This document shows positions 26,901-62,276 of a stretch of DNA of 64,000 nucleotides, in pieces. The position numbers were made by a program, and so were the translations under genes. This DNA is from Macrostomum lignano (lineage: Eukaryota). The DNA is taken from assembly GCA_002269645.1 (NCBI GenBank), contig NIVC01000291.1:620001-684000 (forward strand), given 5' to 3'. The notes under the pieces were generated by a model. The model was not told the origin of the DNA, searched no databases, and saw only the letters and a program-made list of their open reading frames with translations. Each line of letters opens with the position of its first letter. Position 1 is the first letter of the stretch.

Positions 26901-29900
26901 TATCATACATGCGCAACTTTGGGATTCACTCGGCCGTTTCTATTGGCAACACACGCATGTAAGTCGCTATTGGACAGAACAGTAGTCACGTGACTGCTCT
27001 CAGCCAATAGCGACTTACATGCGTGTGTTGCCAATAGAAACGGCCGGGTGAATCCCAAGGTTGCGCCCAAGCATGTAATTTATTAATAGAATAGTCTTGG
27101 TGGCAGCTACCAATATTAAGACATTTATAAAGATAGAAGTTAAGCCCTATTATAACTTGGTGGCATTGGTAGAATAGCTAAGAGGGAAGCAAGACCCCTG
27201 TTACAACTTTGGTGACTCAGCAGTGGGATAATTTCAATGAAAGCAATCATGCCTATTATAACTTTGGTTGCAGCAGTAGAATAGTTACAGGGTGAGAACT
27301 AGTATACCTACGATATTAGTAGTTGTAAATCTGTTTTATTACCAAAATGGCTGTTACTGAAGCAGCTGTTACCAAAGTAGCTATTACTAAAGTCAATGGT
27401 CATTTTCAGTGATGGGCATAGCGGGCGCTAAATTTGAAATTTGCTATAGTGCCGCTACGATTTTTGAAATTCACTAATATTGCTAAATTGAATTTTGACT
27501 TAGCGTACGCTATAAAAGCGCTGCTACATTTCGTTCAAATTCGCTAAAAATTGAAATTCGCTAAATTTTAGGCAACAAATTTTCTTTTACATTGTTTTTT
27601 AGGGTTTTCAGTCTTCTAAACAATTTTGTTTTACTGATTTTAATTTTTAAAGTCTTTTTTTAACGTACGTAACGTAATGACAGTATTTAGAATTTACAAT
27701 CAAGTCATGTATACTGTACTCACTGATACTGTCATACTGATACTGATAGGGATAGAAATAAAATAAATTGATATTCAGTCATACTCATACATGCGCAACC
27801 TCCAAAATTCGGTCGGCCATGCGACTTAGTTTTAACAAAAATGCGACATAGTTTTTGGCCAAAAACGCAACTTACAAGTAAAAAAACCCTAAAGCAAAAT
27901 TAACGCAACTTTGGGTAAACGGCAGAAGTAACTATGACTGTCTTATTGAGCTAAAGTGCCTCATCAGCAACTTAGTACTACTATGGGTATTTTTTTGGGT
28001 GGGAATTTTTGCAACTTCCTTGGTTGGCCACCAAATCAGTCGGCTGGATCGGCCGACTTGGCCGACTGTTGCGCATGTATGGTCATACTCATAGTCATAG
28101 GACTCATAGATAGATCATAGACTGATGCTGATGCCTGATAGACGATAGTGATGACTGATGATTGATGAGTGATGAGTCTAACTTTTCTTTTTTGTTTTTG
28201 TTACTTGTCTCGTTTTTGCTGCTGTTGTTCTTGCTGTTTGTTTTTTGTCTGAATAATTATTTTATCTCCTAAATAAATCTTTAAATGTTTATTTTATTAT
28301 TCAATTTATTCAATTGATTCAATTGCAAGTGTCGTAATTACAATACAATTCTGTAAATCAGCAATTCAATCAATTCCGATAGTAGAATTTAAATAGTCAC
28401 GTCAATTACCAACACTGACTGCCAACTGGCGACAGTGACCGACTTGGCGACTGGCAGTGGCAACTTACTAAGTAAAGTTACTAAACTTACTATGGTACTA
28501 TTGTCTGTTAGTGTTAGTGTTAACTGTACCGGTTACCTTACCTTATCCTTTGGCTTTGTGCCATATAAGTACAACAAATTACTTTTTTCAATTTGACAAA
28601 TTTTTGACTAATTTGCGTTTTATTTTATTAAATGTAAAGTAAAATCTTTCTAATATTTATACTGCTCAAACTAAACAAAAGAAATGGTAAAAATGAATCT
28701 TTTTTTCATGTTTTTAGGAAATTTTGAATTTTAGTGAATTTCATATTTAGCGGCGCTAAATTCGCTAATTTTGAAACTAAAATAGTGGCCGCTACATAGC
28801 AGCGCAAACTTTTTTTAAAAATTTGATAGCGGAAATGCTATATAGCCATACATGCGCAACCTTGGGAATCACCCGGCCGTTTCTATTGGCAACACACACA
28901 TGTAAGTCGCTATTGGCTGAGAGCAGTCACATGACTACTATTCCGTCCAATAGCGACTTACATGTGTGTGTTGCCAATAGAAACGGCCGAGTGAATCCCA
29001 AGGTTGCGCCCAAGCATGTATATAGTGGCGCTACAAAAATATTTAGCGGTGCCTATCACTGGTCATTTTTTGTTACTATAGAAGTGGCAGTTACCAAAGT
29101 GGCTATTACCAAAATGGATTATATTTATAAATTCTGGATCTAGGATTTGAAAGATGTTAAGATGACCTAACTAAAAGGTCAATAGCCAACTACTGGGTAT
29201 ATATCAAGTCACTGGTCAGATTGTCATATTCCATTTCATCATATTGGATAACAAAGTGACCAGAAGCAAAGTAGCTTGAGAAAAAATATGACGAAGTGAC
29301 CAAATATTTACTTATGCTAAATACTTTGTCATCAACCAATCAATCTGTGTGTGATTCAAGTTAGTGTAAACTATTTTTGTTTAATAACTATAAGCTGTGG
29401 CAAGCAGAACCAATCGATTGACAGGTTTTATCAATTGAGATGACAAAATGACTGGGATCATTAGGATTCCAAGTAAATATGAGGGGTGTCCAAAAAGTAG
29501 TGATACTTTTAACCGTAGCTCTCATTCTATACCTTCCTGTGATTTAAAATTTTATGAACTGATAGCGGAAAGTCTCTTCTACAGACTGCTTTTTGAATAT
29601 TTAAAATTGATACTAGAGAACAAAAGTTATACCCACGAAAGTAACAGTACCTGTACCATAGAGTTACAAATTATATCGAAATTTATAATAGTTGACTTCT
29701 GCACTCATTCATTAAGAAGGCATCGATAAATGTCTTGTTTAAGCAATACCAAAGCCCAATTGCAAAATGATGCTCACTGTGACTGACTGAAATTTATCTA
29801 TGGACAGGATCAAGCGCAGAAAAATAAAGCAATAAATGCATTATTTTACTTGCAAACAGAGGAGCTTGCATTTTGCGATTCGTTCATGATTTCATTGCCC

Positions 29901-32900
29901 ATACTTGACAACACACATGAATGTGCACTCAGTTGTTGCTCAGCAAAGTACCATCTTCACTCTTTGGGGCGCTGGCCATGGTGCCTCAGAAATTCATGCA
30001 AAAAGTTGCTTTGTGCACGGATCCTCTGCGGTCAGCAAAATGACAGTTTATTGATAGATGGAGCAGTTCAGCGAGGGAAGGACTGACTTGGCAGATCAGC
30101 ATTGGACAGGGCGGCCATACATTCACCGACCTGATGTACTAGCGGACTCCATTCTGGATCTTCTTGACCATTAGAGAGATCGCTGACAGGTTGGACAAGC
30201 CGAAATCAACAATTCATTGAAGCTTACTCGCATGGATCTCGTGAAGCTCAGCCTATAATTTGTGTAACTCTATGGTACAGGTACTGTTACTTTCGTGGGT
30301 ATAACTTTTGTTCTCTAGTATCAATTTTAAAAATTTAAAAAGCAGTCTGTAGAAGAGATTTTCCACTATCAGTTCATAAAATTTTAAATCACAGGAAGGT
30401 ATAGAATGAGAGCTACGGTTAAAAGTATCACTACTTTTTGGACACCCCTCGTATGTTTGATTGCCACAATAATTCACTTGAAGTTGGAACTAATATGATT
30501 GGTAGATGACAAAATGACTCTCTTCAGGTAGTGCATGTTAATTAAGATGACAAAGTGACCATAGTCGAAGTGAGCACCCTAGACACCCAGATGACAAAAT
30601 GGCAGATGACAAAATGACTAAGAACCATATATCATGCTTAAGTGCAACTTAAGGATTCACACAGCCATTTATATTGGCAACACACACATGTAAGTCGCTA
30701 TTGGCTGAGAGCAGTCACGTGACTACTATTCCGTCCAATAGCGACTTACATGTGTGTGTTGCCAATAGAAACGGCCGAGTGAATCCCAAGGTTGCGCCCA
30801 AGCATGTATATAGTGGCGCTACAAAAATATTTAGCGGTGCCTATCACTGGTCATTTTTTGTTACTATAGAAGTGGCAGTTACCAAAGTGGCTATTACCAA
30901 AATGGATTATATTTATAAATTCTGGATCTAGGATTTGAAAGATGTTAAGATGACCTAACTAAAAGGTCAATAGCCAACTACTGGGTATATATCAAGTCAC
31001 TGGTCAGATTGTCATATTCCATTTCATCATATTGGATAACAAAGTGACCAGAAGCAAAGTAGCTTGAGAAAAAATATGACGAAGTGACCAAATATTTACT
31101 TATGCTAAATACTTTGTCATCAACCAATCAATCTGTGTGTGATTCAAGTTAGTGTAAACTATTTTTGTTTAATAACTATAAGCTGTGGCAAGCAGAACCA
31201 ATCGATTGACAGGTTTTATCAATTGAGATGACAAAATGACTGGGATCATTAGGATTCCAAGTAAATATGAGGGGTGTCCAAAAAGTAGTGATACTTTTAA
31301 CCGTAGCTCTCATTCTATACCTTCCTGTGATTTAAAATTTTATGAACTGATAGCGGAAAGTCTCTTCTACAGACTGCTTTTTGAATATTTAAAATTGATA
31401 CTAGAGAACAAAAGTTATACCCACGAAAGTAACAGTACCTGTACCATAGAGTTACAAATTATATCGAAATTTATAATAGTTGACTTCTGCACTCATTCAT
31501 TAAGAAGGCATCGATAAATGTCTTGTTTAAGCAATACCAAAGCCCAATTGCAAAATGATGCTCACTGTGACTGACTGAAATTTATCTATGGACAGGATCA
31601 AGCGCAGAAAAATAAAGCAATAAATGCATTATTTTACTTGCAAACAGAGGAGCTTGCATTTTGCGATTCGTTCATGATTTCATTGCCCATACTTGACAAC
31701 ACACATGAATGTGCACTCAGTTGTTGCTCAGCAAAGTACCATCTTCACTCTTTGGGGCGCTGGCCATGGTGCCTCAGAAATTCATGCAAAAAGTTGCTTT
31801 GTGCACGGATCCTCTGCGGTCAGCAAAATGACAGTTTATTGATAGATGGAGCAGTTCAGCGAGGGAAGGACTGACTTGGCAGATCAGCATTGGACAGGGC
31901 GGCCATACATTCACCGACCTGATGTACTAGCGGACTCCATTCTGGATCTTCTTGACCATTAGAGAGATCGCTGACAGGTTGGACAAGCCGAAATCAACAA
32001 TTCATTGAAGCTTACTCGCATGGATCTCGTGAAGCTCAGCCTATAATTTGTGTAACTCTATGGTACAGGTACTGTTACTTTCGTGGGTATAACTTTTGTT
32101 CTCTAGTATCAATTTTAAAAATTTAAAAAGCAGTCTGTAGAAGAGATTTTCCACTATCAGTTCATAAAATTTTAAATCACAGGAAGGTATAGAATGAGAG
32201 CTACGGTTAAAAGTATCACTACTTTTTGGACACCCCTCGTATGTTTGATTGCCACAATAATTCACTTGAAGTTGGAACTAATATGATTGGTAGATGACAA
32301 AATGACTCTCTTCAGGTAGTGCATGTTAATTAAGATGACAAAGTGACCATAGTCGAAGTGAGCACCCTAGACACCCAGATGACAAAATGGCAGATGACAA
32401 AATGACTAAGAACCATATATCATGCTTAAGTGCAACTTAAGGATTCACACAGCCATTTATATTGGCAACACACACATGTAAGTCGCTATTGGACAAAATA
32501 GTAATCATATGACTATTCTCAGCCAATAGCCTAGCAACTTACATGTATGTGTTGCCAATAGAAATGGCCAAGTGATTCCCAAGGTTGCGCATGTATGGTA
32601 GTAAATGAGGAGTTTTAAGTTTAAGATTTTTTATTTTATAGGGACTGATTTTTTAATAACCTAAACTTGAATAGAGGCATTGAGACCCATTCAATATTAG
32701 ATTAATTCTAACCCATATTATATAAATCGTGAATTAAAAACCAGTCTAGGGCCTATCAAAGCTCTTAATCACAAAAACTTTCATATAGCATTGCCATTGC
32801 ATACCAAGGGTGGAAAGCATCTCAAAAAAACAAATAACATGTTTTGCTCAGAACATAAAAAATTAAATGTATACATGATATATGCATACAAAACTTCATT

Positions 32901-33066: not shown

Positions 33067-36001
33067 TTTGGAAATTTGAGGCACTTCACTTGATTTAAAA
33101 CTTTAAATAGCTACACGGTTTAGATTTGTTATATATCAATGTGTAGATCTTGCTTGAATGGAAATTTTATACGGACAATATTGACATTTCAGTGAGTGAT
33201 TCACCACAGTTTGGATTGTTAAGAAGAAAAGTTAAGAGATGTTTGAAAGTTCAACGGCCAATGAGCACGGTTTTAAAAAGGTGCGCCTGATATATTTTAC
33301 GCCGGGAAGAACAAAAAACGACTTCGATGATGCTAGTGGGGTATGGATGTTACATAAAGCAAACTTGTACTTTTGATATTATTAATCTTCATCCGATACT
33401 TTGCACTATATCTTAGCATTTATTTTAACATCAAGTCAGTCCGGCTTGGTAAAAAAATTAAAATTAATATTTCATTTTCAAATTAAATTGCTTGTATTTA
33501 CTTGCATCAGTCAGAACAGGAACTTTTTGCTATTGTTTTTAGCAGATCGTCTTGTTGCCGTTGGAACGATCAACGTCGGGCAAAAAGAAATATTTCAGTT
33601 TGCTTCTTTTTCGTGGATTTTAGCTTCTTACATCCAAGAGTTTTAATTCTTACTATTCTCAATGTAGGCGCTGTTGTTCACCACCACTGCCATCTACATG
33701 TACTCCAAAAAATCAATTCACTATAAAAGCTACGATAATGAGAAGAGATCTTGCAGAGCTGCTGCGCGAGAACGCGACATAAAACGTCGTTGCAGGCTTA
33801 TAATCAGATATGGAATATGGTACTCCTACTACATGTACATCATGATATGTAACATGTACATGTATGGCATGTGTGTCTCTTGACTGCGCGCTTATTGATG
33901 GAATGGTAGTTGCATGAGACACTGAGTCTAATACCTATAGAAGCTAGCGCCGTGAGACAAGTGGTCATTGTCTGCAGTTGCGCCAATAGGCGTCTTTGAT
34001 CAGTGCACTGCTCAAATGCTCTTTACGCATACATTGCATGTGCTCGTTACTACATGTAATCTTGATTGATCAAACGCAGTAAAATATTGTAAACATGGTT
34101 TTGGGTATTTGTCAGCAGCTATTTTATTCCCGAAAATGCTCGATTCCAAAGGGATCATGACAAATATAAACTTGCATATCTGTTTGTAATATAAATGACA
34201 GCTTAATGACAGCTATTGCACAAAAATAGCCGAAATGTACATCTAGCCGAGATGAAGCTGTGAGCCATATTTTCTTCAGAGACCTTCATAAAGACTCTAA
34301 GCGATATTAAGAAGTTACACGGCCAAAGAACTATGTAATTATTCATCAAAATCCTTAACGCAAAAACCCGGCATTATTCTTGCTCAGTCTCATTTTAAAG
34401 CCACAAATAATGAGTTTTCCAACTGCACTTTGTACGTTACACTATGCACATTTTGCGGCCTAATTTCATTTAGCAAGAGCTCGCAGTTCCTTGGCATTAC
34501 CTTGAATATCTGCAGTAGTGCGAGCTTCGAGTGTGCAGGGGCGTGCGCGATGCACGGGAATGGAAATGCATGTACTGATCGAGTACACTGTAGATGTGTT
34601 GTACTTCAGTATTGAACTAATTCTCCTTAAACTGGCTGTATGTCATGTACACTGTCGAAAACAGAGTTTAATCTTTTGATAACCACCTCAAAATTTCACA
34701 GGCTCGAAATCACCAAATACTCCCGAGCCAACCATTTCCACAGCTCAAAACTTCTTCATTTCGGCCATGTTGTGACGTTGTCAGTTTAAGGTGGTCCCGA
34801 AAAGGGCCGTTGGACTGCTGTTCTCCATAGTCATTCAACCCTTCAGTTTCACCGTTTCAACTAAACTTTTCCATTCGTTTATTGCGACGTTTACTTGTAG
34901 TAGTGCCCAACGATTTTGTGGCAATTTCTAATTCACTGTATATTTTGCTATCCTCTCTCGCGACCGTATAAAATTGGCACGATCGATAATTTTAAGTTCT
35001 CTCGCCAGCCAATGAAATCACTCGTGCTCGCGCTACCCCCCTCTGCGCTCTTTTATTAAACCCCCCGCCTGGCGGCAGCACTCCTCACTCCCTGCTTGTC
35101 CCTGTTCTTGTGTTCTGTGTTCTCTCTCCCTAGGCTTGTCCTCCGTCCGGTCTGGCTTGCCTAGCCTTGTTCCTTGTTTCCTTCCCTGCTGCCTCTTAGC
35201 TGTCTTATCTGTTTGTCTGGCTGCCTCGAGCCTCCTTATTTCTCACCACGGCCCCTCTGTCTGGGCCAGCCTGCTCACACACTTGCTTGACTGTCTCACG
35301 CCACGACCGACGCCAAACTCGCCACTACGTTTCACTGCCTTCACTGTGCTCATAGCCACTGCTCACGTCACGTCACCATTGTGTCATTCGCCTGCCACTT
35401 GACTTCATATCCAAATTATATTCAACCCATTGTTGCAGCCGCCAGTGCCCAGAAGGCTATAGTCTGTTTATTGCCAGTAACAACCAAACTTAATACTGAT
35501 ATTAACAATAAAGACAACTACGGCAGTTCCTGCCTTTATCGCCAAGTGCTCCGCTACAAAATCCGCTTTACAAGAATTGACTTCAACTTATTTTGGGACT
35601 AAAACGGCCCTTTTAAGGGTCATCGCATAGCTGGCCGCTACGCCAATAACGTGACAATGTCAAATTCCGAACTATGAGAGGAACCCGACCATGCAAGTCC
35701 TGGGCTCGCCCAAAACTATATTGTATTTTCAATGCTTTATAGGACATTGCACGCTTACATTTTCAGTTTATCTCATCCTGCAAAGGCAAAAATGCACTGC
35801 TCGATCACTCTCGCTAAAGGCTTCCCGGCTTGCCAATAGCATGCAGTCCGTTGTCTGCCTCTCATGACTTGCGTGACTGGCTTACAACTTATATTATTGT
35901 GTTGCTGGTGTTGCATAGCAGTCCAGATGAGTTCAACGCTGCGAGTCCGTGGTACTCAAATTTTATCAATTTAGCCAAGTCTCGACCAGCAATTAACTAT
36001 A

Positions 36002-36400
36002 AGACTGGTCCAGCCATTAGTTAAGTCTGGTCCAGCCATTAGTTAAGTCTGGTCCAGCCATTAGTTAAGTCTGGTCCAGCCATTAGTTAAGTCTGGTCCA
36101 GCCATTAGTTAAGTCTGGTCCAGCCATTAGTTAAGTCTGGTTCAACCATTAGTTAAGTCTGGTCCAGCCATTAGTTAAGTCTGGTTCAACAATTAGTTAA
36201 GTCTGGTTCAGCCATTATAGTTAAGTCTGGTTCAATCATTAGTTAAGTCTGGTCCAGCCATTAGTTAAGTCTGGTCCAGCAATTAGTTAAGTCTGGTCCA
36301 GCAATTAGTTAAGTCTGGTCCAGCAATTAGTTAAGTCTGGTCCAGCCATTAGTTAAGTCTGGTCCAGCCATTAGTTAAGTCTGGTCCAGCCATTAGCTGA
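36002..36400. repeat. 22-bp minisatellite (AAGTCTGGTCCAGCCATTAGTT)n upstream of NPF
   Basis: About 18 visible copies. Confidence 0.95.
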
Positions 36401-36514
36401 GTCTGGTGTAGCAATGGCGTCGCAATGTCGCAAACAGCTTCCAGATTGGAAAATTAAGGAAGCGAGCGAGGCTGAAAATGCTTTTCCCGTTATTAAATAT
36501 TTAACGAGAATTTC

Positions 36515-36558
36515 CGATTGGCTGCGCACAAGCGCGGGGAAGTGCACAGGTATTTAAA
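36515..36558 (+). promoter_or_regulatory. Candidate NPF core promoter: inverted CCAAT box and TATA-like TATTTAAA
   Basis: GATTGG near 36515 and TATTTAAA at 36551-36558, about 110 bp upstream of the ATG at 36667. Motif match and spacing only. Confidence 0.4.
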
Positions 36559-36666
36559 GCTGGTGCAACCCGTTACCGCCGCTGCAGCCCTCCAAACTAC
36601 AGCCCCGCAACAGAGATTCGGAAGTCCGGAACCTTCTCTCCTAATTCGTTAAGAACCTTCTGAGCA

Positions 36667-37437
36667 ATGTCGGCATTGACAACCGGTTCCAGGGCCCTCA
36701 TCCTGCTGGGACTCGTGCACCTGCTGGTGCTGCTGCAGGCCTCGGGCGGTGGGGCCAGCCCGGCCTGGGACAAACGCGAGCAGCTGAGCGACCCGAGCGA
36801 CCGCGTGCAGAAGCCGGCCCGCGGGAGCTGGAGTTCAAGGAATACCTGAAGAACCTGCGCAGCTACATGAGCCTCATCGCTCGGCCCAGGTGAGCCACTG
36901 GTTTGTGCGGAAATTTAAGATGTTACTTTGAGTTGAAGTGCAGGGCTGGTTGAGTAATCTAGAGGTGAATTGGATGTGTCTTGATAGCAGCGCTCTTGAT
37001 GCTTAGGGTGCTGCTTTGGCCAGTTGAAGCAGGGAAGAAAGCTCTGCGGCCCTGGTCTTTGAGGGGTGTACATGGAAATGTAGCAGTAGGTTCCCCGGCC
37101 CTAAAACTCTCATTTTACCCATGAGTTGGCAGGGAGATATTTACGGCTGAGTCAGCTAGAAAGAGGATATTTGAGAAAAGGATTGAGACAAAAAACCAGA
37201 TACGACCAGACGCGCTCGTCAGAAGCTGCACCAGAAACAATAGCAGACTCTGCTGCTTTGCCTGTGCTCAGCACAGCATTCAGCCTCCGCCTCTGTAGCT
37301 TGACGCCTCAGTGGCGGTGTGGGCGGGAAGAGCTGGAGAACTCGAATGCCCCGAGCTATGGGTGATCCCGAGATCCTCAGCAACAATCTCGCACCGCTGC
37401 AATTTGCAGGTTCGGCAAGCGGTCCGACACGCCGTGA
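36667..37437 (+). CDS. npf: Neuropeptide F / neuropeptide Y-like precursor, 2 coding exons, with one apparent 1-nt deletion
   Basis: join(36667..36889,37410..37437). Signal peptide (RALILLGLVHLLVLLQA), then, after a one-base shift, ELEFKEYLKNLRSYMSLIARPR|F-GKR-SDTP*. There is a phase-2 intron inside the Arg codon of RF (AG|gtgagc...ttgcag|G), Tyr at positions 10 and 17 from the amidated end, and a GKR amidation/cleavage site. Confidence 0.88.
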
Positions 37438-37617
37438 CGCGGGCGGCCTGCTGAGAGCGTCGGCTCGTTTTGTTTGAACGCATCGAAGCACAGAAGTGGA
37501 AATACACCCGCTAGTGATGCAGCCAACTGACTGGCTTGGCAAATCCTCAGCTTCCAGCTTTTTAACTATTGTCTATTCTTGGCGTGTCAAGAGGCTGGGA
37601 AAATGTTTGTTCTATGA

Positions 37618-38184
37618 AACAACAGGCAGTGATGCAAAACAACAGGCAGTGATGCAAAACAACAGGCAGTGATGCAAATCAACAGGCAGTGATGCAAAAC
37701 AACAGGCAGTGATGCAAAACAACAGGCAGTGATGCAAAACAACAGGCAGTGATGCAAAACAACAGGCAGTGATGCAAAACAACAGGCAGTGATGCAAAAC
37801 AACAGGCAGTGATGCAAATCAACAGGCAGTGATGCAAAACAACAGGCAGTGATGCAAAACAACAGGCAGTGATGCAAAACAACAGGCAGTGATGCAAAAC
37901 AACAGGCAGTGATGCAAAACAACAGGCAGTGATGCAAAACAACAGGCAGTGATGCAAAACAACAGGCAGTGATGCAAAACAACAGGCAGTTTTGCAAAAC
38001 AACAGGCAGTGATGCAAAACAACAGGCAGTGATGCAAAACAACAGGCAGTGATGCAAAACAACAGGCAGTTATGCAAAACAACAGGCAGTTATGCAAAAC
38101 AACAGGCAGTGATGCAAAACAACAGGCAGTTATGCAAAACAACAGGCAGTTATGCAAAACAACAGGCAGTGATGCAAAACAACA
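37618..38184. repeat. 20-bp minisatellite (AACAGGCAGTGATGCAAAAC)n
   Basis: About 28 copies. Confidence 0.95.
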
Positions 38185-39176: not shown

Positions 39177-39409
<233 letters not shown>

Positions 39410-42820: not shown

Positions 42821-43990
42821 ACGTGGACGTGCACCAGACTGTACCATTTTCCTACTACTATTCAGACTTGAGGGCTGTAGCCCGGTTGGTTCAGGCGGGT
42901 TGGCCAAGTAACTTTCGGAACATTTGCCACTCTGTCCGTCAGTATTGGAGTTTCAAGGAGGACTTGACCAACAATGATGGCGTGCTGATGAAGTTGGATC
43001 GCGTTATTGTTCCAGCATCGTTGCGGCAGAAGATTCTGCCAATTTTATACCACGGTCATGCTGGCGCGGGCAATACGGAGGCTTCAAATTCTGTACTGGC
43101 TAGGCATGTCAGAGGGCATTAAGAACTTCGTGAAGCACTGCGGCGCATGTCAGACGTTTCAGCCGGCCAACCCAAAGGAACCGCTGTTGAACCATCAGAT
43201 TCCGAATGCACCATGGACCAAGGTTGGTTGTGATCTGCTGGACTTCAATGGCGACAAGTGGCTAGTCGTTACCAGCTGCTATTACAGCAACTGGATCGAA
43301 CAAATTAGGTCAACAGTCTGGAGCTGACCTGGTGATTGCTCGAATTAAGTCAATGTTCGCCAGGTTCGGTATCGTCGAAGAGCTGGTCAGTGACAATGGG
43401 CCCCCATTCAGCTCGTTTAAGTTTCAAGAGTTTGCTGCACAGTTTGGTTTCGTGCACACGCGCTCGTCACCCGGATACCCGCAGTCCAACGGAATGGCTG
43501 AGAAGGCAGTCAAGGTGGCAAAGAACATCCTGAGGAAAGCCAATCGGTCCGAAATTGCGCTAATGGAATATCGAGCTTCGCCAATTAGCGGTACGAGCAC
43601 CAGCCCCAGCGAGCTCATGTTCGAGCTCATGTTCGGTCGGTTGATTCGGACGAAGCTGCCAGCGGGTGAGGAGGCACTGCTCAAAGACTAAACAACCGGA
43701 TTCTCCAAAGCCCCGCTGCAGGCTGCTCAAAAACGGCACTACGACCAGCAAGCCCGACCGCTCTCAACACTGAATCGGGGAGATGCAGTTTGTTTTCGGC
43801 ACGGTTTCAGATGGGAGCCAGCTGTTGTGACGCAAGCTGACCCGGAGCGCCGCACCTATCAACTGCTGACTCAAAGCGACAGGGAGCTGATTCGCAATCG
43901 CCGGGAGCTGTGATCAGTGCCGTCGCAGCAGTCCACTGCTGAAGCCGAAGACGTCCAACTGGCGGCCCAAGCGGCTCTGGCCGGCGATGA
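42821..43990 (+). mobile_element. Ty3/gypsy LTR-retrotransposon pol remnant (integrase), frameshifted
   Basis: ORFs 42649-43122, 43007-43327 and 43332-43691 give an HHCC zinc finger (HGHAG...CGAC), PWTKVGCDLLDF, VSDNGPPFSS and SSPGYPQSNGMAEKAV (DDE), and ALMEYRASP...SPSELMFGR. No LTR pair was identified. Confidence 0.9.
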
Positions 43991-49400: not shown

Positions 49401-52083
49401 CGGCGCAGTTGACCGACACGTCGGTAGTCGGCGTCGCGTAGCCCGGCGGTGTCGCCTTGGATGACAGGCGGCCGCGGCGGCCTTTGAGGCTGTCCGAGCG
49501 GACAACTGGGGGGATTTCGAGAGTTGTTGGTTTGAGTAGTGGGTCATGTTTGAAACTGGTGGTTTGAGTAGTGGGTCATGTTTGAAACTGGTGGTTTGAG
49601 TAGTGGGTCAGGGTTGGGACTGGTGGTTTGAGTAGTGGGTCAGGGTTGGGACTGGTGGTTTGAGTAGTGGGTCAGGGTTGGGACTGGTGGTTTGAGTAGT
49701 GGGTCAGGTTTGGGACTGGTGATTTGAGTAGTGGGTCAGGGTTGGGACTAGTGGTTTGAGTAGTGGGTCATGTTTGGGACTGTTGGTTTGAGTAGTAGGT
49801 CAGGGTTGGGACTGGTGATTTGAGTAGTGGGTCAGGGTTGGGACTGGTGATTTGAGTAGTGGGTCAGGGTTGGGACTGGTGATTTGAGTAGTGGGTCAGG
49901 GTCGGGACTGGTGGGTTGAGTAGTGGGTCAGGTTTGGGACTGGTGATTTGAGTAGTGGGTCAGGACTTTTAGTGGTGGTGAGTCGGTCAGAGATGTGACT
50001 GACGCTTTGAGTAGTTTGGTGGATTAATTGCACTGGTGACTGATGATTTAGCTGGCAGGTTGTGAACCACCTTGATAACCTACGAGCACTGCTCACTCAC
50101 CCTCTTTGACCATTCCAACTTTCAGGCACTTGCGAAAGCGGCAATACTGGCAACGGTTTCTCCGTTTTTTATCGATTACGCAATCGTTGTTGTGCTGGCA
50201 GGTGTACTGAGCGTTCTTCTGGATTGTTCGCTGCAAATGCGATTAGGGAAATTCGGTGAGGGTAGGGCAGCTAGAAAAAATATTTGGCTGCACACATTCC
50301 GTGGTCCACAAAACACTTCACGTCACCACACCACACTATGGGGGGCAAGAGTTGCCCCGAGGCAAACGCGTCTGATACTCTCTGGGTTCGATTCATCGCG
50401 CAGCCACATTAATTTTGCGATTCCACACGAAAAATTTGTGATTCACACCAATTCCTGACGATTCACCAATGCCTGACGATTCACAAATGCCTGACGATTC
50501 ACCAATGCCTGACGATTCACCAATGCCTGACGATTCACCAATGCCTGACGATTCACCAATGCCTGACGATTCACCAATGCCTGACGATTCACCAATGCCT
50601 GACGATTCACCAATGCCTGACGATTCACCAATGCCTGACGATTCACCAATGCCTGCCGATTCACCAATGCCTGACGATTCACCAATGCCTGACGATTCAC
50701 CAATGCCTGACGATTCACCAATGCCTGACGATTCACCAATGCCTGACGATTCACCAATGCCTGACGATTCACCAATGCCTGACGATTCACCAATGCCTGA
50801 CGATTCACCAATGCCTGACGATTCACCAATGCCTGACGATTCACCAATGCCTGACGATTCACCAATGCCTGACGATTCACCAATGCCTGACGATTCACCA
50901 ATGCCTGACGATTCACCAATGCCTGACGATTCACCAATGCCTGACGATTCACCAATGCCTGACGATTCACCAATGCCTGACGATTCACCAATGCCTGACG
51001 ATTCACCAATGCCTGACGATTCACCAATGCCTGACGATTCACCAATGCCTGACGATTCACCAATGCCTGACGATTCACCAATGCCTGACGATTCACCAAT
51101 GCCTGACGATTCACCAATGCCTGACGATTCACCAATGCCTGACGATTCACCAATGCCTGACGATTCACCAATGCCTGACGATTCACCAATGCCTGACGAT
51201 TCACCAATGCCTGACGATTCACCAATGCCTGACGATTCACCAATGCCTGACGATTCACCAATGCCTGACGATTCACCAATGCCTGACGATTCACCAATGC
51301 CTGACGATTGTCTTCTGATTCACACCAATGCCTGAGGATTGTCTTCTGATTCACACCAATGCCTGAGGATTGTCTTCTGATTCACACCAATGCCTGAGGA
51401 TTGTCTTCTGATTCACACCAATGCCTGAGGATTGTCTTCTGATTCACACCAATGCCTGAGGATTGTCTTCTGATTCACACCAATGCCTGAGGATTGTCTT
51501 CTGATTCACACCAATGCCTGAGGATTGTCTTCTGATTCACACCAATGCCTGAGGATTGTCTTCTGATTCACACCAATGCCTGAGGATTCACCAATGCCTG
51601 ACGATCCCTGTTAAGGCACGATGTCGCCGAATGCGTTGTGCCAGGGTTCCCGCAGCCCTCCTTGTTTACACCAAGCCCCGCCATGCCGCACTACGGGAAA
51701 ACACGACCAGTTTTACCTTGAAGAATCCTTTGCAGCCCTCGCAGGTGCGCACGCCGTAGTGCTGGCAGGAGGCGTGGTCCCCGCACACCAGACACGCCAG
51801 GCCTTTCGAAGCGGCCTCGTCAGCGGACGATGATTCCAGGGTGTCGGCCGGCGAGCTGCGCCCGGAGCCTGCGGCTGCTGCCACAGCAGCGGAGGCCAGC
51901 GGCGCCAGGACCGGCTGCGCAGGCGAGGTGGCTGCCTCGCTGAACGCTGCTGATCGCGACTGCAGCCCTGTGAGGCTCGTCACAGGCGGCAGGGTGAAGC
52001 CGGGCAGCGGCTGGGGGTAGCTACTGAAGTCCAGCTGCGACTGCTGGCAGACAAACCTTGGCTGCTGCTCTTGTGACTGTTGT

Positions 52084-52115
<32 letters not shown>

Positions 52116-54379
52116 TTGCATGGCGAACTCCGATATGTGGCTGTGGGAGAGACAGAATTGGGTCGCAACTGACGGCTTCTCCTCCATCAGCGCATCCGTT
52201 GGCTCCATCTTCAGCAGCAGTGAAGATGAGGACTGCTGCAGCTGCAGCGGCTGATGCTGCAGTTCGGCGTCTCCGAAGCCAAGGAGCAGCTGGTTCTGGT
52301 GCTGATGGCTGTCGCATGTAGTTGACGACAGAAGGACGTCGCTAGGACTGTGCTGGTGCTGCTGAAGGTGTTGCTGATGCTGCTGGTGTTGCTGATGCTG
52401 CTGGTGCTGCTGATACTGCTGGTGCTGATTTTCGTCGTGGATCAGCGACTGCTGCCTGCGCATCAGCAGTAGCTGCTGCTGGCTGTCGTTAGCACCAAAG
52501 AACAATCCGTTATACGAAGTCAGAAGCGGCTGAAGATGCTGAGGATGCTGAGGATGCTGAAACTGCTGGAACTGCTGCTGCTGCTGCTGCTGCTGGGCCA
52601 GAACTCCGGCTGGAGGAAATGCGAAGGCCGACTCGACGCTCGAGGCGAAGTCGAAATCGGCCAAAGCGCCGTCCACCGCGTGCAGCGGTGATGGAGCCGG
52701 TGGAGACTGGCGGAGCTGGAACTGAGGCAGGGGTCAGGGTGAGAGAATGGCAGAGCTGAAACTGAGGCAGGGGTCATGGCGGAGCTGGAACTGAGGCAGG
52801 GGTCAGGGTGAGAGACTGGCGGAGCTGGAACTGAGGCAGGGGTCATGGCGAGAGACTGGCAGAGCTGGAACTGAGGCAGGGGTCAGGGTGAGAGACTGGC
52901 GGAGCTGGAACTGAGGCAGGGGTCAGGGTGAGAGAATGGCAGAGCTGAAACTGAGGCAGGGGTCATGGCGGAGCTGGAACTGAGGCAGGGGTCAGGGTGA
53001 GAGACTGGCAGAGCTGGAACTGAGGCAGGGGTCATGGCGAGAGACTGGCAGAGCTGGAACTGAGGCAGGGGTCATGGCGGAGCTGGAACTGAGGCAGGGG
53101 TCAGGGTGAGAGACTGGCGGAGCTGGAACTGAGGCAGGGGTCAGGGTGAGAGACTGGCAGAGCTGGAACTGAGGCAGGGGTCAGGGTGAGAGACTGGCAG
53201 AGCTGGAACTGAGGCAGGGGTCAGGGTGAGAGACTGGCGGAGCTGGAACTGAGGCAGGGGTCAGGGTGAGAGACTGGCAGAGCTGGAACTGAGGCAGGGG
53301 TCATGGCGAGAGACTGGCGGAGCTGGAACTGAGGCAGGGGTCATGGCGAGAGACTGGCAGAGCTGGAACTGAGGCAGGGGTCAGGGTGAGAGACTGGCGG
53401 AGCTGGAACTGAGACAGGGGTCAGGGTGAGAGACTGGCGGAGCTGGAACTGAGGCAGGGGTCAGGGTGAGAGACTGGCAGAGCTGGAACTGAGGCAGGGG
53501 TCATGGCGAGAGACTGGCAGAGCTGGAACTGAGGCAGGGGTCATGGCGAGAGACTGGCAGAGCTGGAACTGAGGCAGGGGTCAGGGTGAGAGACTGGCAG
53601 AGCTGGAACTGAGGCAGGGGTCAGGGTGAGAGACTGGCAGAGCTGGAACTGAGGCAGGGGTCAGGGTGAGAGACTGGCAGAGCTGGAACTGAGGCAGGGG
53701 TCAGGGTGAGAGACTGGCGGAGCTGGAACTGAGGCAGGGGTCAGGGTGAGAGACTGGCAGAGCTGGAACTGAGGCAGGGGTCATGGCGAGAGACTGGCGG
53801 AGCTGGAACTGAGGCAGGGGTCATGGCGAGAGACTGGCAGAGCTGGAACTGAGGCAGGGGTCAGGGTGAGAGACTGGCGGAGCTGGAACTGAGACAGGGG
53901 TCAGGGTGAGAGACTGGCAGAGCTGGAACTGAGGCAGGGGTCAGGGTGAGAGACTGGCGGAGCTGGAACTGAGGCAGGGGTCAGGGTGAGAGACTGGCGG
54001 AGCTGGAACTGAGGCAGGGGTCAGGGACCTGAGCTAGACCCCTGAGCTAGAGACAATGCAAGGTGAGAAGCACTGAAAGGCTGAGAAACAGTTTTGACAT
54101 AAATTTCCAGAAGTCCGACAAGCTGACAGATGCTCAGAGCCTCACCTGGTCGTGCAGCAGCATTTCCTGTTGTGCCCGGAACTGCCTCGCCTCTTCGTGG
54201 AAAGAGAGCCGAGCCGGAGATGCTGGCAGGCGGGTGCCAGTTAGATCAACCGCCAGCGAGAGGCAGAGAGAGCGGAGTTGGGCGCGCGCCTGTTGCGTCG
54301 AGGGATTCGCAGGGAAGGCGGGGACCCGGGATGATGCAGAAGAAGCCACAAAGCCTCGGCAGCTGGGGCAGGGAGGCAT
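46466..54379 (-). CDS. NR4A: NR4A-subfamily orphan nuclear receptor (Nur77/Nurr1/Hr38-like), 6 exons, about 801 aa
   Basis: complement(join(54146..54379,51717..52706,50101..50230,48962..49505,48604..48806,46466..46770)) = 2406 nt, phases consistent. DBD: [26 protein letters not shown]|[43 protein letters not shown]|[17 protein letters not shown]: [19 protein letters not shown]...RAAYR and [12 protein letters not shown]...YLSSLL. The first exon and start codon are tentative. Confidence 0.9.
46888..47580. repeat. Degenerate about 30-bp minisatellite (core TGGGAGGATCTGG), NR4A last intron
   Basis: Visible tandem copies with drifting unit sequence. Confidence 0.9.
48070..48595. repeat. 18-bp minisatellite (AGTGAACAGGCAGACTAC)n, NR4A last intron
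   Basis: Visible tandem copies with 31-bp variants. Confidence 0.9.
49527..49965. repeat. 32-bp minisatellite (GGTTTGAGTAGTGGGTCAGGGTTGGGACTGGT)n, NR4A intron
   Basis: About 14 copies. Confidence 0.95.
50453..51600. repeat. 18-bp minisatellite (GCCTGACGATTCACCAAT)n, about 47 copies, followed by a related 31-bp unit, about 9 copies
   Basis: Visible arrays in the NR4A intron between the two zinc-finger exons. Confidence 0.95.
52700..54026. repeat. 40-bp minisatellite (CTGGCAGAGCTGGAACTGAGGCAGGGGTCAGGGTGAGAGA)n, NR4A intron
   Basis: About 33 copies abutting the acceptor at 52707. Confidence 0.95.
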
Positions 54380-58572: not shown

Positions 58573-61500
58573 ATGATCAGCAACCAGGGAATCCATTGCC
58601 TGCAGATTAATCTGCAGCACTGCGTCGCAGCCTCGGTCAACCTATGCGTTACGCCGAGCTCGACAAGCCGGGGCTCATCCTCGTCCAGGAACCCTGGACT
58701 CTCAGAGGTAAGCCTCAAAACGCCCCTGCTGGCTACAATTGTTTTTATACTTACCCTCGCGAGGCCAACCAGCCTCCCAGAGCTTGCATCTTTGCGAGCA
58801 AAACGCTCAGTGCGTGGCTCAGATCGGACCTGTCCAACAGGGACATCTGCGTCATCCAATCCGAGGACCTTCTTCCTGGGAAGACCACCCTCATTGCCTC
58901 GGTTTACCTACCAGGCGATGCTGCGGTCGTCCCCAGAGCCCTCGCTACGCTGGTAGAGCTCTGCTCTGCCAAAAACTACGAGCTCATGGTTGCCGGCGAC
59001 ATCAACGCCCACCACACTCACTGGGGCAGCACTGGCATTAATCAGAGAGGCGAAGACCTCCTAGCCTACGTTGCCTCTACGACCCTCGAGTTCTGCAACT
59101 CTGGGTCCACCCCTACCTTTGACAACGGACGGTGGTCGGAGGTGATCGACGCTACGCTCGCAACGCCCAGACTCTACCAGAGTATTGGGGCGTGGCGGGT
59201 GCTTCCAGTGTCCTCACTCTCGGATCACAAGTTCATCTCCTTCAACCTAATGGCCGCGCGTAGCGCAACTCGTGTTACGTGGAGACGGAACGCCAGAAAT
59301 ACTGATTGGGAAACCTTCGGGCTCGCCCTGAAGGAATTCCATCGGTCTCCTGGCCAACCATCCACGATCACGTCGTGCCGAGAGGCGGATGAGTGCGCGA
59401 CTGTTTTGACAGAGACGCTAACCGCCGCCTTTGAGGCGTCCTGCCCTTTAAAAGCCTATAAAGGGAAAAAATCGGCGCCGTGGTGGAATCCCGAGCTCGG
59501 CAACCTCCGTCGCAGGGCTAAGAGACTCCACCGCAGAGCAACTAAAACTAAGAGCCCTGCAGACCAAACCGCCTATCATGAAGCAATCCATGAGTTTAAA
59601 AGGCAGGTTAGGAATGCAAAGGCTCAAAAATGGCGACAATACTGTGAGGAGCTAGAGGGCTCACGCCCCACCTCCAGAGTTGTGAAAGCGCTCACGCTGG
59701 ACAAAATGTCTAAGCTCTCCTCGGTCAAACGCACCGACGGTACGTCCACGGACAACCCAGGAGAAACGCTTGATGTAATGCTCACTGCGTTTTTCCCCAA
59801 CGAGCCAGCTAACCAGACCACTCCGGATCACTCGGAGGGAGGTCACGCGCTGGCTGCCTCTATCATCACGGAGGACCGCATTGTGAGAGCGGCAAATTCC
59901 TTCAAGCCTTTCAAAGCCCCAGGACCCGACGGCATTGTACCGGCCCTCCTAAGAGAGGCGGTTAAATGCCCAGGCTTCCTGCGCAAACTTTGCAGCCTTC
60001 TTCGGGCATGCATCACGCTTGGTTATGTCCCACAGGCATGGACCGAGGCAAAGGTGATCTTTATCCCTAAGCCAGGCCGCCCGGACTACCATTCTATCAA
60101 ATCCTTCAGACCGATCAGCTTGACCTCCTCCCTGGTCAAGCTGATGGAGAGACTGGTGCTTTGGCGCCTTCTCTCTGTTGAGCTGAAGAACAAACCTCTC
60201 AGCGAGAACCAGCACGCTTTTCGGGCGGGTCGCTCCACTGAAAGCGCGCTGCACGTCCTGGTCGATAAACTCGAGAAGGCCGTGCTTGGTAATGGCTTTG
60301 CTCTGGGGATCTTCCTGGACATCATTGGCGCCTTCGATAACGTCCTCTTTGAGGCGTTCCGAAGAGCTCTTTGTGAGAGGCAAACGCACTCACATCTCAC
60401 CAGATGGATCATGTACATGATCAGCCATCGCACGGCCACCGCCAGTCTGCTGGGCTACCAGAGGACGGTCCCCGTCTGCAAAGGTAGCCCGCAAGGTGGG
60501 GTGCTGTCTCCAGTTCTCTGGAATATGGTCATCGATGAGCTCCTCCGGGATGTTCGGCCTGACCCCATTCTGAAAGTTGGATATGCGGACGATGTCACCG
60601 CGGTGGCATCTGGTCCGTCCCCTGATACCCTCAGGGACCTTCTTCAGAACTTTATCTACGCCGCTGAGCAATGGGCGGACCGCTGTGGTTTAAGGCTCTC
60701 TGAGACTAAGACCGCAGCGATCATGTTCACCAGCAGGACCAAGTGGCAGATTCGGCCGCTCACGCTTTACGGAAGGGAAATCCCCTTCTGCAAGCAGACT
60801 AAATGTCTGGGTATTACCCTGGATCACAGGCTGAACTGGTCACCCCACGTTCAAACAAAAGCCAAAAAGGCCTTCGCAGTCCTCGCGCAATTGCGCAGGG
60901 CTGTCGGCACCACCTGGGGGCTCACCCCCAAGCGCCTCTGGTGGATCTACACTGCAATGGTTAGGCCCGCTATCTCGTATGGCGGCTTGATCTGGGCTAG
61001 CGCCCTGCAGATAAAGACCTGTCTAGAGGCTCTCAGGAGAGCGCAAGGGCGCGCTTGTCGCACGATCATGAGCGCCCCTCCGTCTGCTCCTTACGATGGC
61101 CTCAACGCCTTCCTCAACATTCCTCCGCTGGACATCTTTGTCCGCAGGGAAGCGGCTAAGACTGCCCGCCGTCTAGCTGACGCTGGCATTCGAATCCAGC
61201 CCCATAGGGCCATGGCTAAGCGCAAGCTTCTGCCCCACGCTGACCTCTGCCTCAAGGACTTGAGAGACAGCGGCGGGCTCCACGTCCTGTCTGACGGCGA
61301 ACCCCGCACTCTCAACCTCTTTCAGCGCTACAAGGTCACCATCCCCTCTAGGGATGCTGCCAATGACCACTGGAATTTCCAGGAGGTCCATTGCTACACG
61401 GACGGATCCATCAAAGACGGTCGCGCCGGCTTTGGGGTCTGCATCATCATCAACGGCCGCGTAATTGCCACGCATGCCCAGCACACTGGTAGACTCTCCA

Positions 61501-62276
61501 CAGTCTTCCAGAACGAAGTCCTTGCCATCAGCTCTTGCGCTGCAGAGCTGAACGTCAAGGTTACGAGAGGAAAGACTATTGTCATCCACTCCGACAGCCA
61601 AGCGGCCTTACAGGCCCTTTGCCACACCACAACGAACTCCCGGACAGTCGCCGACTGCGCCCGGCAGCTCAACCTCCTGGCCAGAAGCAATACTGTCAGG
61701 CTGAAGTGGATCCCAGGGCACGCAGGGTTTCCGGGGAACGAGCTGGCAGACACCCTCGCCAAGAGGGGCGGCTCTGGCTCTTTCTTCGGCCCTGCCCCCC
61801 TGGTCCCTATGCCCTTGACAGTCATCAATCGTCAGATCGACGACTGGGCTGACTCCCTCCACAGGGACAGATGGGCGGGCACCCAAAACTGCCGGCAATC
61901 TCGTGCCGCGGTTCCTTGCCCGTCTCACAGGCTCAGAAACATCCTTCTGAACCAGAATCGGAAGGATATTCGAGCCCTTGTCATGACCCTTACCGGCCAT
62001 GGCTACCTCGCCAGGCACTGCTTCCTCCGAGGCGACCTCGAGAGCGAAATTTGCCCCTTCTGCGAGTGCGACAATGAAGATGCTCAGCATTTTGTCTGTC
62101 ACTGCCCTTTCTTTAACAGAGACCGGCTACGCTACCTCGGGCCGAACCCGTCCATTGACGAGGTCTGCCAGCCCGACAGCATCCCACGGCTCATCCAGTT
62201 CCTTCGGGCGACTAGACGAGCCAGTTTCTTCCCAACGGAAGATCACGCTGCAGGACGGACCGGCGGACCACCCTGA
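58573..62276 (+). CDS. Retrotransposon ORF2: AP endonuclease, reverse transcriptase, RNase H, CCHC
   Basis: ATG at 58573 (MISNQGIHCLQINLQHC), a one-base shift near 58640-58646, then the open 1210-codon frame. Motifs: LVQEPW, GDINAHH, SDH, KAPGPDGI, FRPISLTS, PQGGVLSP, YADD, YTDGS, HSDSQAAL, WIPGHAGFPGNELAD and CPFC..EDAQHFVCHC. Confidence 0.93.

What the first reader, a model, noticed from the sequence alone, without database searches (positions are those of the whole stretch)
36667..37437. Hidden NPF/NPY neuropeptide gene invisible to the ORF track
Seen: a signal peptide, the core EYLKNLRSYMSLIARPRF-GKR, and an intron splitting the penultimate Arg codon. Known: the C-terminal RxRF-amide, Tyr at -10 and -17 and this phase-2 intron are hallmarks of NPY/NPF genes, and flatworm NPF/NPY peptides include regulators of reproduction. 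The ending is ARPRF rather than the more usual GRPRF. The location of the missing base gives two possible mature peptides: KR-cleaved EQLSDPSDRVQKPARxELEF... (39 aa), or ...AAERPERPRAEAGPRELEF... Automated annotation would probably miss or truncate this gene.
Basis: partly seen in the sequence, partly recalled or inferred. Interest (0 to 1): 0.7.

Follow-up and report, generated by a model that had tools for sequence, protein, structure and literature searches.

The report
Flatworm neuropeptide F gene, frameshifted copy
This is a real two-exon neuropeptide F/Y gene of the flatworm Macrostomum lignano, but it is already in UniProt; the copy here lacks one G that an intact sister copy has, so the find is ordinary.

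Summary
At 36667-37437 (+) there is a two-exon NPY/NPF-type prepropeptide gene. It has a signal peptide, a KR site, the core ...EYLKNLRSYMSLIARPR|F-GKR-SDTP, and a 520-nt GT..AG intron after the second base of the penultimate Arg codon. The window is Macrostomum lignano DNA. The gene is not new. UniProt A0A1I8JDA1 ('Pancreatic hormone', 83 aa) is an intact, 98%-identical sister copy. A0A1I8GYL4 is exactly this copy read in the wrong frame without a signal peptide. A paralogue (NPF-2, three homeologous copies) is annotated in GenBank with the same intron. The intact copy reads ...VQKPGPRELEF..., so the window has GG at 36816-36817 where GGG is needed. The mature peptide is therefore EQLSDPSDRVQKPGPRELEFKEYLKNLRSYMSLIARPRF-amide (39 aa). 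ARPRF is common in arthropod and rotifer NPFs. I could not decide whether the missing G is a real lesion in this homeolog (about 55%) or an assembly error (about 40%), because no reads were available. Interest is low: a known kind, already in a database, uncharacterised in this species.

The parts
36448..36463 (+). Upstream block GGAAAATTAAGGAAGC, conserved with the NPF-2 paralogue (putative promoter element)
   Evidence: Window/L001 alignment. Also conserved in all three NPF-2 homeologs. The function is inferred.
36510..36533 (+). Conserved block ATTTCCGATTGGCTGCGCACAAGC containing an inverted CCAAT box (ATTGG)
   Evidence: The function is inferred.
36551..36558 (+). TATA-like TATTTAAA about 110 nt upstream of the ATG; the transcription start is inferred near 36590-36600
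   Evidence: The paralogue has TTTTAAAT at the same place. The partial GenBank model of NPF-2 g3 starts about 40 nt downstream of it.
36667..36889 (+). Coding exon 1. It holds the start codon, the signal peptide (about aa 1-29), the spacer SPAWD, KR (36772-36777), and the mature peptide from E38 (36778) to the first two bases of the penultimate Arg codon.
   Evidence: tblastn of A0A1I8JDA1: aa 1-50 map to 36667-36816 at 98% identity, and aa 44-75 map to 36783-36890 in the other frame. AF2 predicts a helix at 3-25 and a hydrophobic core is present.
36816..36817 (+). Frame break: GG where the intact copy must have GGG (ccg-GGc-ccg = P-G-P). One base is missing relative to A0A1I8JDA1.
   Evidence: P0001 reads VQKPGPRELEF. 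The Pro codon ends at 36816 and the Gly codon of frame B starts at 36816, so one base would have to be read twice. An intron cannot produce this. GC3 switches frame here.
36890..37409 (+). Intron, 520 nt, GT..AG, phase 2, inside the penultimate Arg codon (AG|G)
   Evidence: The same junction is used in UniProt models P0001 and P0003 and in the GenBank models of the paralogue.
36977..36999 (+). Intronic 23-mer TGTCTTGATAGCAGCGCTCTTGA, identical in NPF-2 g2. The core GATAGCAGCGCTCTTGA is present in all copies. Possible regulatory element.
   Evidence: The rest of the intron is only about 54% identical. The function is unknown.
37410..37437 (+). Coding exon 2: third base of Arg, Phe (37411-37413), Gly amide donor (37414-37416), KR (37417-37422), SDTP, and the stop codon (37435-37437)
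37438..37600 (+). Presumed 3' UTR, with blocks conserved with the paralogue (e.g. CTGACTGGCT). No canonical AATAAA was seen.
   Evidence: The extent is inferred.

Best explanation
The locus is one homeologous copy of the Macrostomum lignano NPF-1 gene, a typical NPY/NPF-type prepropeptide gene.

From an intact copy the pathway would be as follows (all steps inferred):
1. The signal peptide is removed.
2. A prohormone convertase cuts after K36-R37 and after the C-terminal G-K-R.
3. A carboxypeptidase trims the basic residues.
4. The Gly is used for amidation. The product is EQLSDPSDRVQKPGPRELEFKEYLKNLRSYMSLIARPRF-NH2 (39 aa, monoisotopic mass 4691.48).
5. The peptide acts on an NPY/NPF-type G-protein-coupled receptor.

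Shown here: the gene anatomy, its family features, an intact 98%-identical sister copy, a paralogue with the same structure, and a one-base deficit in the window copy in a G run at 36816-36817.

As assembled, the window copy would yield only the signal peptide plus a 23-residue non-NPF tail. I lean (about 55%) to this being a genuine, recent, homeolog-specific 1-bp deletion in a neopolyploid genome that keeps an intact copy. The confidence value given here (0.9) is for the gene identity and anatomy. The real-versus-artefact question is split among the rivals.
For: - Organism and prior annotation. The only close hits among 5.8 billion protein clusters are M. lignano proteins named 'Pancreatic hormone'.
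- Intact sister copy. P0001 maps across the break.
- Mis-framed model. P0003 equals frame B of this window from 36654.
- Family signal. Pfam Hormone_3 gives E = 4.5e-6. The best PDB sequence match is Moniezia expansa neuropeptide F, 1K8V; it aligns PSDxV from frame A and the C-terminal core from frame B.
- Intron. The intron in the penultimate Arg codon is the family's gene hallmark (10.1101/712687; PMC2953531). It is used here and in the paralogue.
- Helix. AF2 predicts a helix at 52-71 with pLDDT about 77-86.
- Genome background. Three subgenomes with about 2% SNP divergence explain the multiple copies (PMC10733133). NPF-2 has three homeologs that differ by SNPs and indels.
- No other decay. 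The ATG, signal peptide, dibasic sites, splice sites, stop codon and promoter blocks are intact.
Against: - Pfam Hormone_3 scores are just below the gathering cut-off: 27.0-28.6 bits against 28.7.
- The PDB match has E = 0.086.
- No polyproline fold was modelled with confidence.
- There is no transcript, peptide or receptor evidence for this species in what I could search.
- Against a real lesion: the break is a homopolymer-length difference, which is the classic long-read consensus error, and nothing else in the gene has decayed. Both public assemblies were built from the same PacBio reads (PMC5730564).
Confidence: 0.9

Rival explanations
1. Assembly artefact. The animal's genome has GGG at 36816-36817, and this copy is a fully functional NPF-1 gene. 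The consensus merely under-called a G in a GC-rich run.
For: - The break is a one-base homopolymer-length difference flanked by CCC.
- The rest of the gene is flawless, and GC3 stays at or above 0.9 on both sides in the proper frames.
- Only one amino-acid difference (H18Y) separates it from the intact copy.
- The assemblies derive from PacBio CLR reads of a repeat-rich neopolyploid in which short-read polishing is hampered by multi-mapping (PMC5730564; PMC10733133).
- A G-run length difference is also seen among NPF-2 homeologs.
Against: - The run is short (2 versus 3 G).
- A 3.6-kb LINE ORF in the same window is uninterrupted, so the local indel error rate is not high.
- The same frameshift is present in a public UniProt model (P0003). 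I could not establish whether that model comes from the same assembly as the window.
Confidence: 0.4
2. Old pseudogene or chance resemblance. The NPF-like reading is a decayed relic or a coincidence, with no functional relative.
For: Only the frame break itself.
Against: - The pattern is expected 0.08 times by chance and occurs once, exactly here.
- There is 98% identity to an intact protein.
- The paralogue is conserved in its promoter, splice sites and an intron element.
- No second lesion is present.
Confidence: 0.02
3. The frame is bridged biologically. Possible routes are an upstream exon spliced into frame B, ribosomal frameshifting, or RNA editing, so the assembled sequence still makes NPF.
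For: Frame B is open from 36645. A public model (P0003) reads it that way.
Against: - Frame B has no start codon and no signal peptide.
- The frame-A signal peptide is conserved nearly base for base with the paralogue.
- The intact copy joins frame A to frame B with one extra base, which splicing cannot imitate.
- No slippery-site logic is evident.
Confidence: 0.03

Closest known systems
UniProt A0A1I8JDA1 (M. lignano, 'Pancreatic hormone', 83 aa)
   Same: Same gene family member (NPF-1). It is 98% identical over aa 1-50 and identical from residue 51 to the stop. It uses the same exon junction.
   Different: It is intact: it reads KPGPRELEF, which requires one more G. It has Tyr18 instead of His18, so it is a different genomic copy.
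UniProt A0A1I8GYL4 (M. lignano, 87 aa)
   Same: Exactly the frame-B translation of this window from 36654, spliced 36889/37410.
   Different: It is a mis-framed, N-terminally open model with no Met and no signal peptide.
M. lignano NPF-2: BOX15_Mlig021284g1/g2/g3 (PAA59922.1, PAA87384.1, PAA94719.1)
   Same: Same two-exon structure, same phase-2 intron, same promoter blocks and intronic element, IARPRFGKR-xDTP ending, and a nearly identical signal peptide.
   Different: It has a shorter predicted peptide of 31 aa (EQQPPLEKPSWIKEYLQNLRGYMTLIARPRF) and a divergent N-terminal half. All three copies are intact.
Moniezia expansa neuropeptide F (PDB 1K8V), the founding NPF
   Same: A peptide of about 39 residues with a PSDxV motif, an aromatic residue at 10 and Tyr at 17 from the C-terminus, and RPRF at the end. 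The gene has the intron in the penultimate Arg codon (10.1101/712687).
   Different: It has GRPRF rather than ARPRF and YF rather than YM. The sequence match is marginal (E = 0.086).
Schmidtea mediterranea npy family (npy-1 to npy-11, especially npy-8)
   Same: Flatworm NPY/NPF genes with the same intron architecture. npy-8 is needed for sexual maturation (PMC2953531).
   Different: Planarian precursors carry a longer C-flanking peptide (NPY-8B, 15-16 aa). The M. lignano precursors end four residues after GKR. No function has been tested in M. lignano.
Arthropod and rotifer long NPFs
   Same: Identical IARPRFGKRS ending in Adineta and crustacean-like transcripts. QAARPRF-amide occurs in an insect (PMC3127401).
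   Different: The N-terminal halves differ and the C-flanking peptides are long.
Vertebrate NPY/PYY/PP
   Same: The Pfam Hormone_3 family, a C-terminal amphipathic helix, RxR[FY]-amide, and the same intron position.
   Different: They have a C-terminal Tyr, an RQRY ending and a well-defined PP-fold. They are 36 aa long and lie directly after the signal peptide.

Membership tests
NPY/NPF neuropeptide family | C-terminal R-x-R-[FY] followed by Gly (amide donor) and a dibasic site | tested here: met
   RPRF-G-KR is read across the 36889/37410 junction. The same is seen in P0001 and P0002.
NPY/NPF neuropeptide family | [quoted passage not shown] | tested here: met
   AG|GT...AG|G. The junction is used by public models and by the paralogue. 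The feature is defined in 10.1101/712687 and PMC2953531.
NPY/NPF neuropeptide family | Spacing of aromatic and hydrophobic residues: [FY]x3[LIVM]x2Yx3[LIVMFY]xRxR[FY] (the PROSITE-type signature, recalled from memory) | tested here: met
   YLKNLRSYMSLIARPR(F) is the single hit in the six-frame translation. The mean in shuffles was 0.08.
NPY/NPF neuropeptide family | Score at or above Pfam PF00159 (Hormone_3) gathering threshold | tested here: inconclusive
   Scores are 27.0 bits (P0001 and the composite), 23.9 (NPF-2) and 28.6 (P0003), against a cut-off of 28.7, with E from 1e-6 to 4e-5. These fall just short. The precomputed Pfam field lists PF00159.24 for P0001 and P0003.
NPY/NPF neuropeptide family | N-terminal signal peptide and a single long (about 36-40 aa) peptide per precursor | tested here: met
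   There is a hydrophobic core at aa 10-23 and an AF2 helix at 3-25. One 39-aa peptide lies between KR and GKR in the intact copy. In the window copy this holds only if the missing G is supplied.
NPY/NPF neuropeptide family | PP-fold: an N-terminal polyproline stretch packed on a C-terminal alpha-helix | tested here: inconclusive
   The helix at 52-71 is predicted with pLDDT about 77-86, but the Pro-containing N-terminal part (DPSDRVQKPGP) has pLDDT below 50.
NPY/NPF neuropeptide family | Amidated mature peptide that activates an NPY/NPF-type GPCR | not testable with these tools
   This needs peptidomics and receptor assays.
Short NPF (sNPF) / FMRFamide-like peptides | Short (about 8-12 aa) peptides, usually several copies per precursor, without the NPY-type intron | tested here: not met
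   This is a single long peptide with the NPY-type intron. Multi-copy precursors such as P0142 and P0143 look different.
Expressed, intact gene (this copy) | Uninterrupted reading frame from ATG to stop across the splice | tested here: not met
   Frame A stops at 36847-36849. The core is in frame B. One base is missing at 36816-36817 relative to P0001.

The most novel reading that the evidence does not exclude
The missing G is genuine. This would then be a very young, homeolog-specific knockout of a neuropeptide gene in a neopolyploid flatworm, caught before any other decay: an example of the first step of gene fractionation after whole-genome duplication. Alternatively the broken copy could still secrete a new 23-residue peptide, EQLSDPSDRVQKPARGSWSSRNT, from the retained signal peptide and KR site.
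Probability: 0.5. Interest if true: 0.25.

Novelty: already known. Interest (0 to 1): 0.15.

Why it matters
It matters little beyond housekeeping.

- It shows that the M. lignano NPF-1 locus is mis-modelled in one public protein set (A0A1I8GYL4). No GenBank protein for it turned up in the database searched.
- It fixes the predicted mature peptide as a 39-mer with a KPGPRELEF centre. It also flags a second peptide, NPF-2 (31-mer).

Both peptides are ready-made candidates for RNAi, in situ hybridisation and peptidomics in a transgenic-tractable, sexually reproducing flatworm. There one could test whether the planarian NPY-8 role in sexual maturation is general. If the frameshift is real, it is a small data point on homeolog loss in a neopolyploid.

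Tried and rejected
- **Fetching the DNA of the intact copy or of this contig.** Exact-product look-ups failed for P0001, P0003, the 60-aa frame-A ORF, the LINE ORF and a 465-aa ORF. I could therefore not compare homeologous NPF-1 loci or tell which assembly the window comes from.
- **Third protein search.** I spent it on the nuclear-receptor ORF at 51666-52673(-), hoping to reach neighbouring M. lignano loci. It returned only generic DNA-binding-domain hits (NR4A-like) and no M. lignano protein.
- **Exhaustive HMMER scan.** A scan of 1.84 billion representatives with P0001 added only two multi-copy RPRF-amide precursors of unknown origin.
- **dN/dS between NPF-1 and NPF-2.** There were too few sites to say anything: dN 0.11, dS 0.13 overall; 0.07 and 0.18 in the core.
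- **AF2 for a PP-fold.** Only the helix is confident. I did not run a fold search on a single helix.
- **Rfam.** No RNA family was found in the window.
- **Bacterial promoter and terminator scan.** Irrelevant for a eukaryote.
- **Literature.** McVeigh et al. 2009 is the likeliest place for a published M. lignano NPF, but it is not held. No paper in the searchable library contains LIARPRF or links Macrostomum with NPF/NPY experimentally.
- **Rejected readings.** A tiny intron bridging the frames is rejected because the intact protein needs a base to be read twice. Chance resemblance is also rejected.

Full report
**What is in the sequence**

- An ATG at 36667 opens a 60-codon frame: MSALTTGSRALILLGLVHLLVLLQASGGGASPAWDKREQLSDPSDRVQKPARGSWSSRNT*. 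It has a classic n-h-c signal-peptide layout and a KR site.
- A second frame, offset by +2, reads ...AEAGPRELEFKEYLKNLRSYMSLIARPR up to 36889.
- A donor cccag|gtgagc follows at 36889/36890. An acceptor tttgcag|g lies at 37409/37410.
- Exon 2 is g-ttc-ggc-aag-cgg-tcc-gac-acg-ccg-tga. It completes Arg-Phe-Gly-Lys-Arg-Ser-Asp-Thr-Pro-stop at 37437.
- The intron is 520 nt and sits after the second base of the penultimate Arg codon. Tyr lies 10 and 17 residues from the terminal Phe.
- Third-position GC is 0.87-1.0 in the ATG frame up to about 36815. After that it is 0.93 in the other frame. Codon bias therefore places a frame switch at about 36816 on its own evidence.
- The NPY-type spacing pattern occurs once in the six-frame translation of the 64 kb, exactly here. 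The mean in shuffles was 0.08.
- A mechanical ORF list shows only the 60-aa piece.

**Whose gene it is, and whether it is hidden**

A search of 5.8 billion protein clusters with the joined reading returned three proteins, all from Macrostomum lignano.

- **A0A1I8JDA1** (83 aa, 'Pancreatic hormone'). It reads MSALTTGSRALILLGLVYLL...VQKPGPRELEFKEYLKNLRSYMSLIARPRFGKRSDTP. It is intact and differs from the window by H18Y and at the break.
- **A0A1I8GYL4** (87 aa). It is letter for letter the window's second frame from 36654, spliced at 36889/37410. In other words, it is this copy (or an identical one) annotated in the wrong frame, with no Met and no signal peptide.
- **A paralogue of 80 aa**, which I call NPF-2. 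It is present as three near-identical GenBank proteins, BOX15_Mlig021284g1, g2 and g3.

The family is therefore already recorded for this species. What automated annotation got wrong is this particular copy. No GenBank-sourced protein corresponds to NPF-1 in any form, although all three NPF-2 copies are annotated.

**Where the base is missing**

tblastn puts residues 1-50 of the intact protein on 36667-36816 at 98% identity. It puts the rest on the other frame and on exon 2.

The Pro codon of ...K-P ends at 36816, and the Gly codon of G-P-R-E-L in the other frame starts at 36816. The intact protein therefore needs that G twice. The window has ccGGccc where the intact copy must have ccGGGccc.

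Splicing can only skip bases, so the intact protein cannot be an annotation trick on this sequence. It comes from another genomic copy, as the H18Y difference also indicates.

The mature peptide of an intact copy is EQLSDPSDRVQKPGPRELEFKEYLKNLRSYMSLIARPRF-amide, 39 residues. The second option is the mis-framed reading.

**Corroboration from the paralogue**

I fetched the three NPF-2 loci from assembly GCA_002269645.1.

- They have the same two-exon layout, the same donor context (CCCAG|GTGAGCCACTG) and the same split Arg codon.
- They have the same tiny second exon, ending four residues after GKR.
- Between NPF-1 and NPF-2 the signal-peptide DNA is almost identical. The N-terminal part of the peptide has diverged, and the C-terminal core is conserved.
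- The introns are only about 54% identical, except for a 23-mer (36977-36999) that is identical to NPF-2 g2.
- Upstream, three blocks are conserved: GGAAATTAAGGAAGC, an inverted CCAAT box within ATTGGCTGCGCA, and a TATA-like box. The partial GenBank model of NPF-2 g3 starts about 40 nt downstream of the TATA-like box.

These are the marks of a family of real, regulated genes.

**Family membership**

[quoted passage not shown] It is described for human NPY and Moniezia expansa NPF (10.1101/712687) and for ten planarian npy genes (PMC2953531). It is met here.
- RPRF-GKR and the Tyr spacing are met.
- Pfam Hormone_3 matches at E about 1e-6 to 4e-5. The scores are 23.9-28.6 bits against a gathering cut-off of 28.7, so they fall just short.
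- The best solved-structure sequence match is M. expansa neuropeptide F (1K8V, E = 0.086). That alignment joins PSDRV from the first frame to the core from the second frame, which again supports the frame-joined reading.
- AF2 on a 14-sequence alignment predicts the C-terminal helix at residues 52-71 with pLDDT about 77-86. It gives no confident polyproline packing.
- ARPRF is not odd. IARPRFGKR is invariant in the Adineta (rotifer) and crustacean-like precursors found by the profile search, and QAARPRF-amide is a known insect NPF fragment.
- One small peculiarity: M. lignano precursors have only SDTP or PDTP after GKR, so there is no C-flanking peptide.

**Is the frameshift real?**

The DV1 line of M. 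lignano carries three subgenomes (S, L1, L2) about 2% apart (PMC10733133). This explains the triplicated NPF-2 and the two NPF-1 forms.

Both public assemblies were built from the same PacBio reads. Mlig_3_7 was additionally polished with Illumina and RNA-seq data (PMC5730564).

For an artefact:
- The lesion is a homopolymer-length difference.
- The gene is otherwise perfect.

For a real lesion:
- The run is short.
- A 3.6-kb LINE ORF in the same window is uninterrupted.
- Indels between homeologs are common. Three indel differences occur in 1.1 kb among the NPF-2 copies, one of them in a G run.
- Redundancy after genome duplication permits the loss of one copy.

I could not retrieve reads, the intact locus or the window's contig. 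I put a real, recent homeolog-specific deletion at about 55%, an assembly error at about 40%, and anything else at about 5%.

**How it works (inferred)**

An intact copy would be processed as follows:
1. The signal peptide is cleaved.
2. A prohormone convertase cuts at KR and at GKR.
3. The basic residues are trimmed.
4. The Gly is used for amidation.
5. The resulting NPF-amide signals through an NPY/NPF-type receptor.

In planarians one family member, npy-8, is needed to reach and keep sexual maturity (PMC2953531). A cognate receptor, NPYR-1, has been characterised (cited in PMC6114109, and in 10.1101/712687). Whether NPF-1 or NPF-2 does this in M. lignano is untested. I found no paper in the searchable library on M. 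lignano NPF. The likeliest source, McVeigh et al. 2009, is not held.

**Verdict**

This is a correct and careful reading of a real gene, but the gene is of a well-known kind and is already in a public protein database for this species. The useful residue is threefold: a corrected model for this copy, the exact predicted peptide, and an open question about one base that read mapping would settle.

Noticed in passing
window 35977-36407 and 37617-38184; also 39177-39409: The NPF gene is boxed in by two satellite arrays. A 22-mer x19 (AAGTCTGGTCCAGCCATTAGTT) ends about 40 nt before the first conserved promoter block. A 20-mer x28 (AAACAACAGGCAGTGATGCA) starts about 180 nt after the stop. An (AGT)x78 array lies further on. 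The paralogue locus L001 has no such arrays.
   Followed up: partly
window 36977-36999; L001 5300-5322: The intronic 23-mer TGTCTTGATAGCAGCGCTCTTGA is identical between NPF-1 and NPF-2 g2, although the introns are otherwise about 54% identical. NPF-2 g1 and g3 keep the core GATAGCAGCGCTCTTGA. It may be a regulatory element.
   Followed up: partly
window 58644-62276 (+): An uninterrupted 1210-aa ORF of a non-LTR retrotransposon with endonuclease, reverse transcriptase and RNase H domains. It looks like a young, possibly active copy.
   Followed up: partly
window 51666-52676 (-): The ORF ends with the first half of a nuclear-receptor C4 zinc finger (Pfam zf-C4, positions 2-28 of 70), so it is probably an exon of a nuclear-receptor gene. 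The nearest database hits are NR4A-type DNA-binding domains. No M. lignano protein was recovered.
   Followed up: partly
window 43007-43691 (+): Two adjacent ORFs carry retroviral-type integrase pieces (Integrase_H2C2 and rve). This is a fragment of an LTR retroelement.
   Followed up: no
window 29448-29729 and 31236-31517: Two identical 93-aa ORFs lie 1788 nt apart, which implies a direct duplication of at least a few hundred bases in the AT-rich part of the window.
   Followed up: no
L001/L002/L003 (NPF-2 homeologs), alignment A4: The three homeologs differ by about 2% SNPs, a G-run length difference (8 to 10 G) just upstream of the TATA-like box, a 7-bp duplication in the 5' UTR and a 5-bp indel cluster in the intron. 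Their coding sequences have two amino-acid changes (V21L, R62H), one silent change and no indel.
   Followed up: yes
proteins P0142, P0143: Precursors of unknown organisms carry three tandem NPF-like units, each ending in RPRFGKR. This multi-copy layout differs from canonical single-copy NPF precursors.
   Followed up: no
window 1-64000: Composition is strongly patchy: GC is 33-41% in 1-8 kb, 16-20 kb and 26-34 kb, against 52-62% in 8-16 kb and 46-64 kb. Many long 'ORFs' in the GC-rich parts are low-complexity repeat translations.
   Followed up: no
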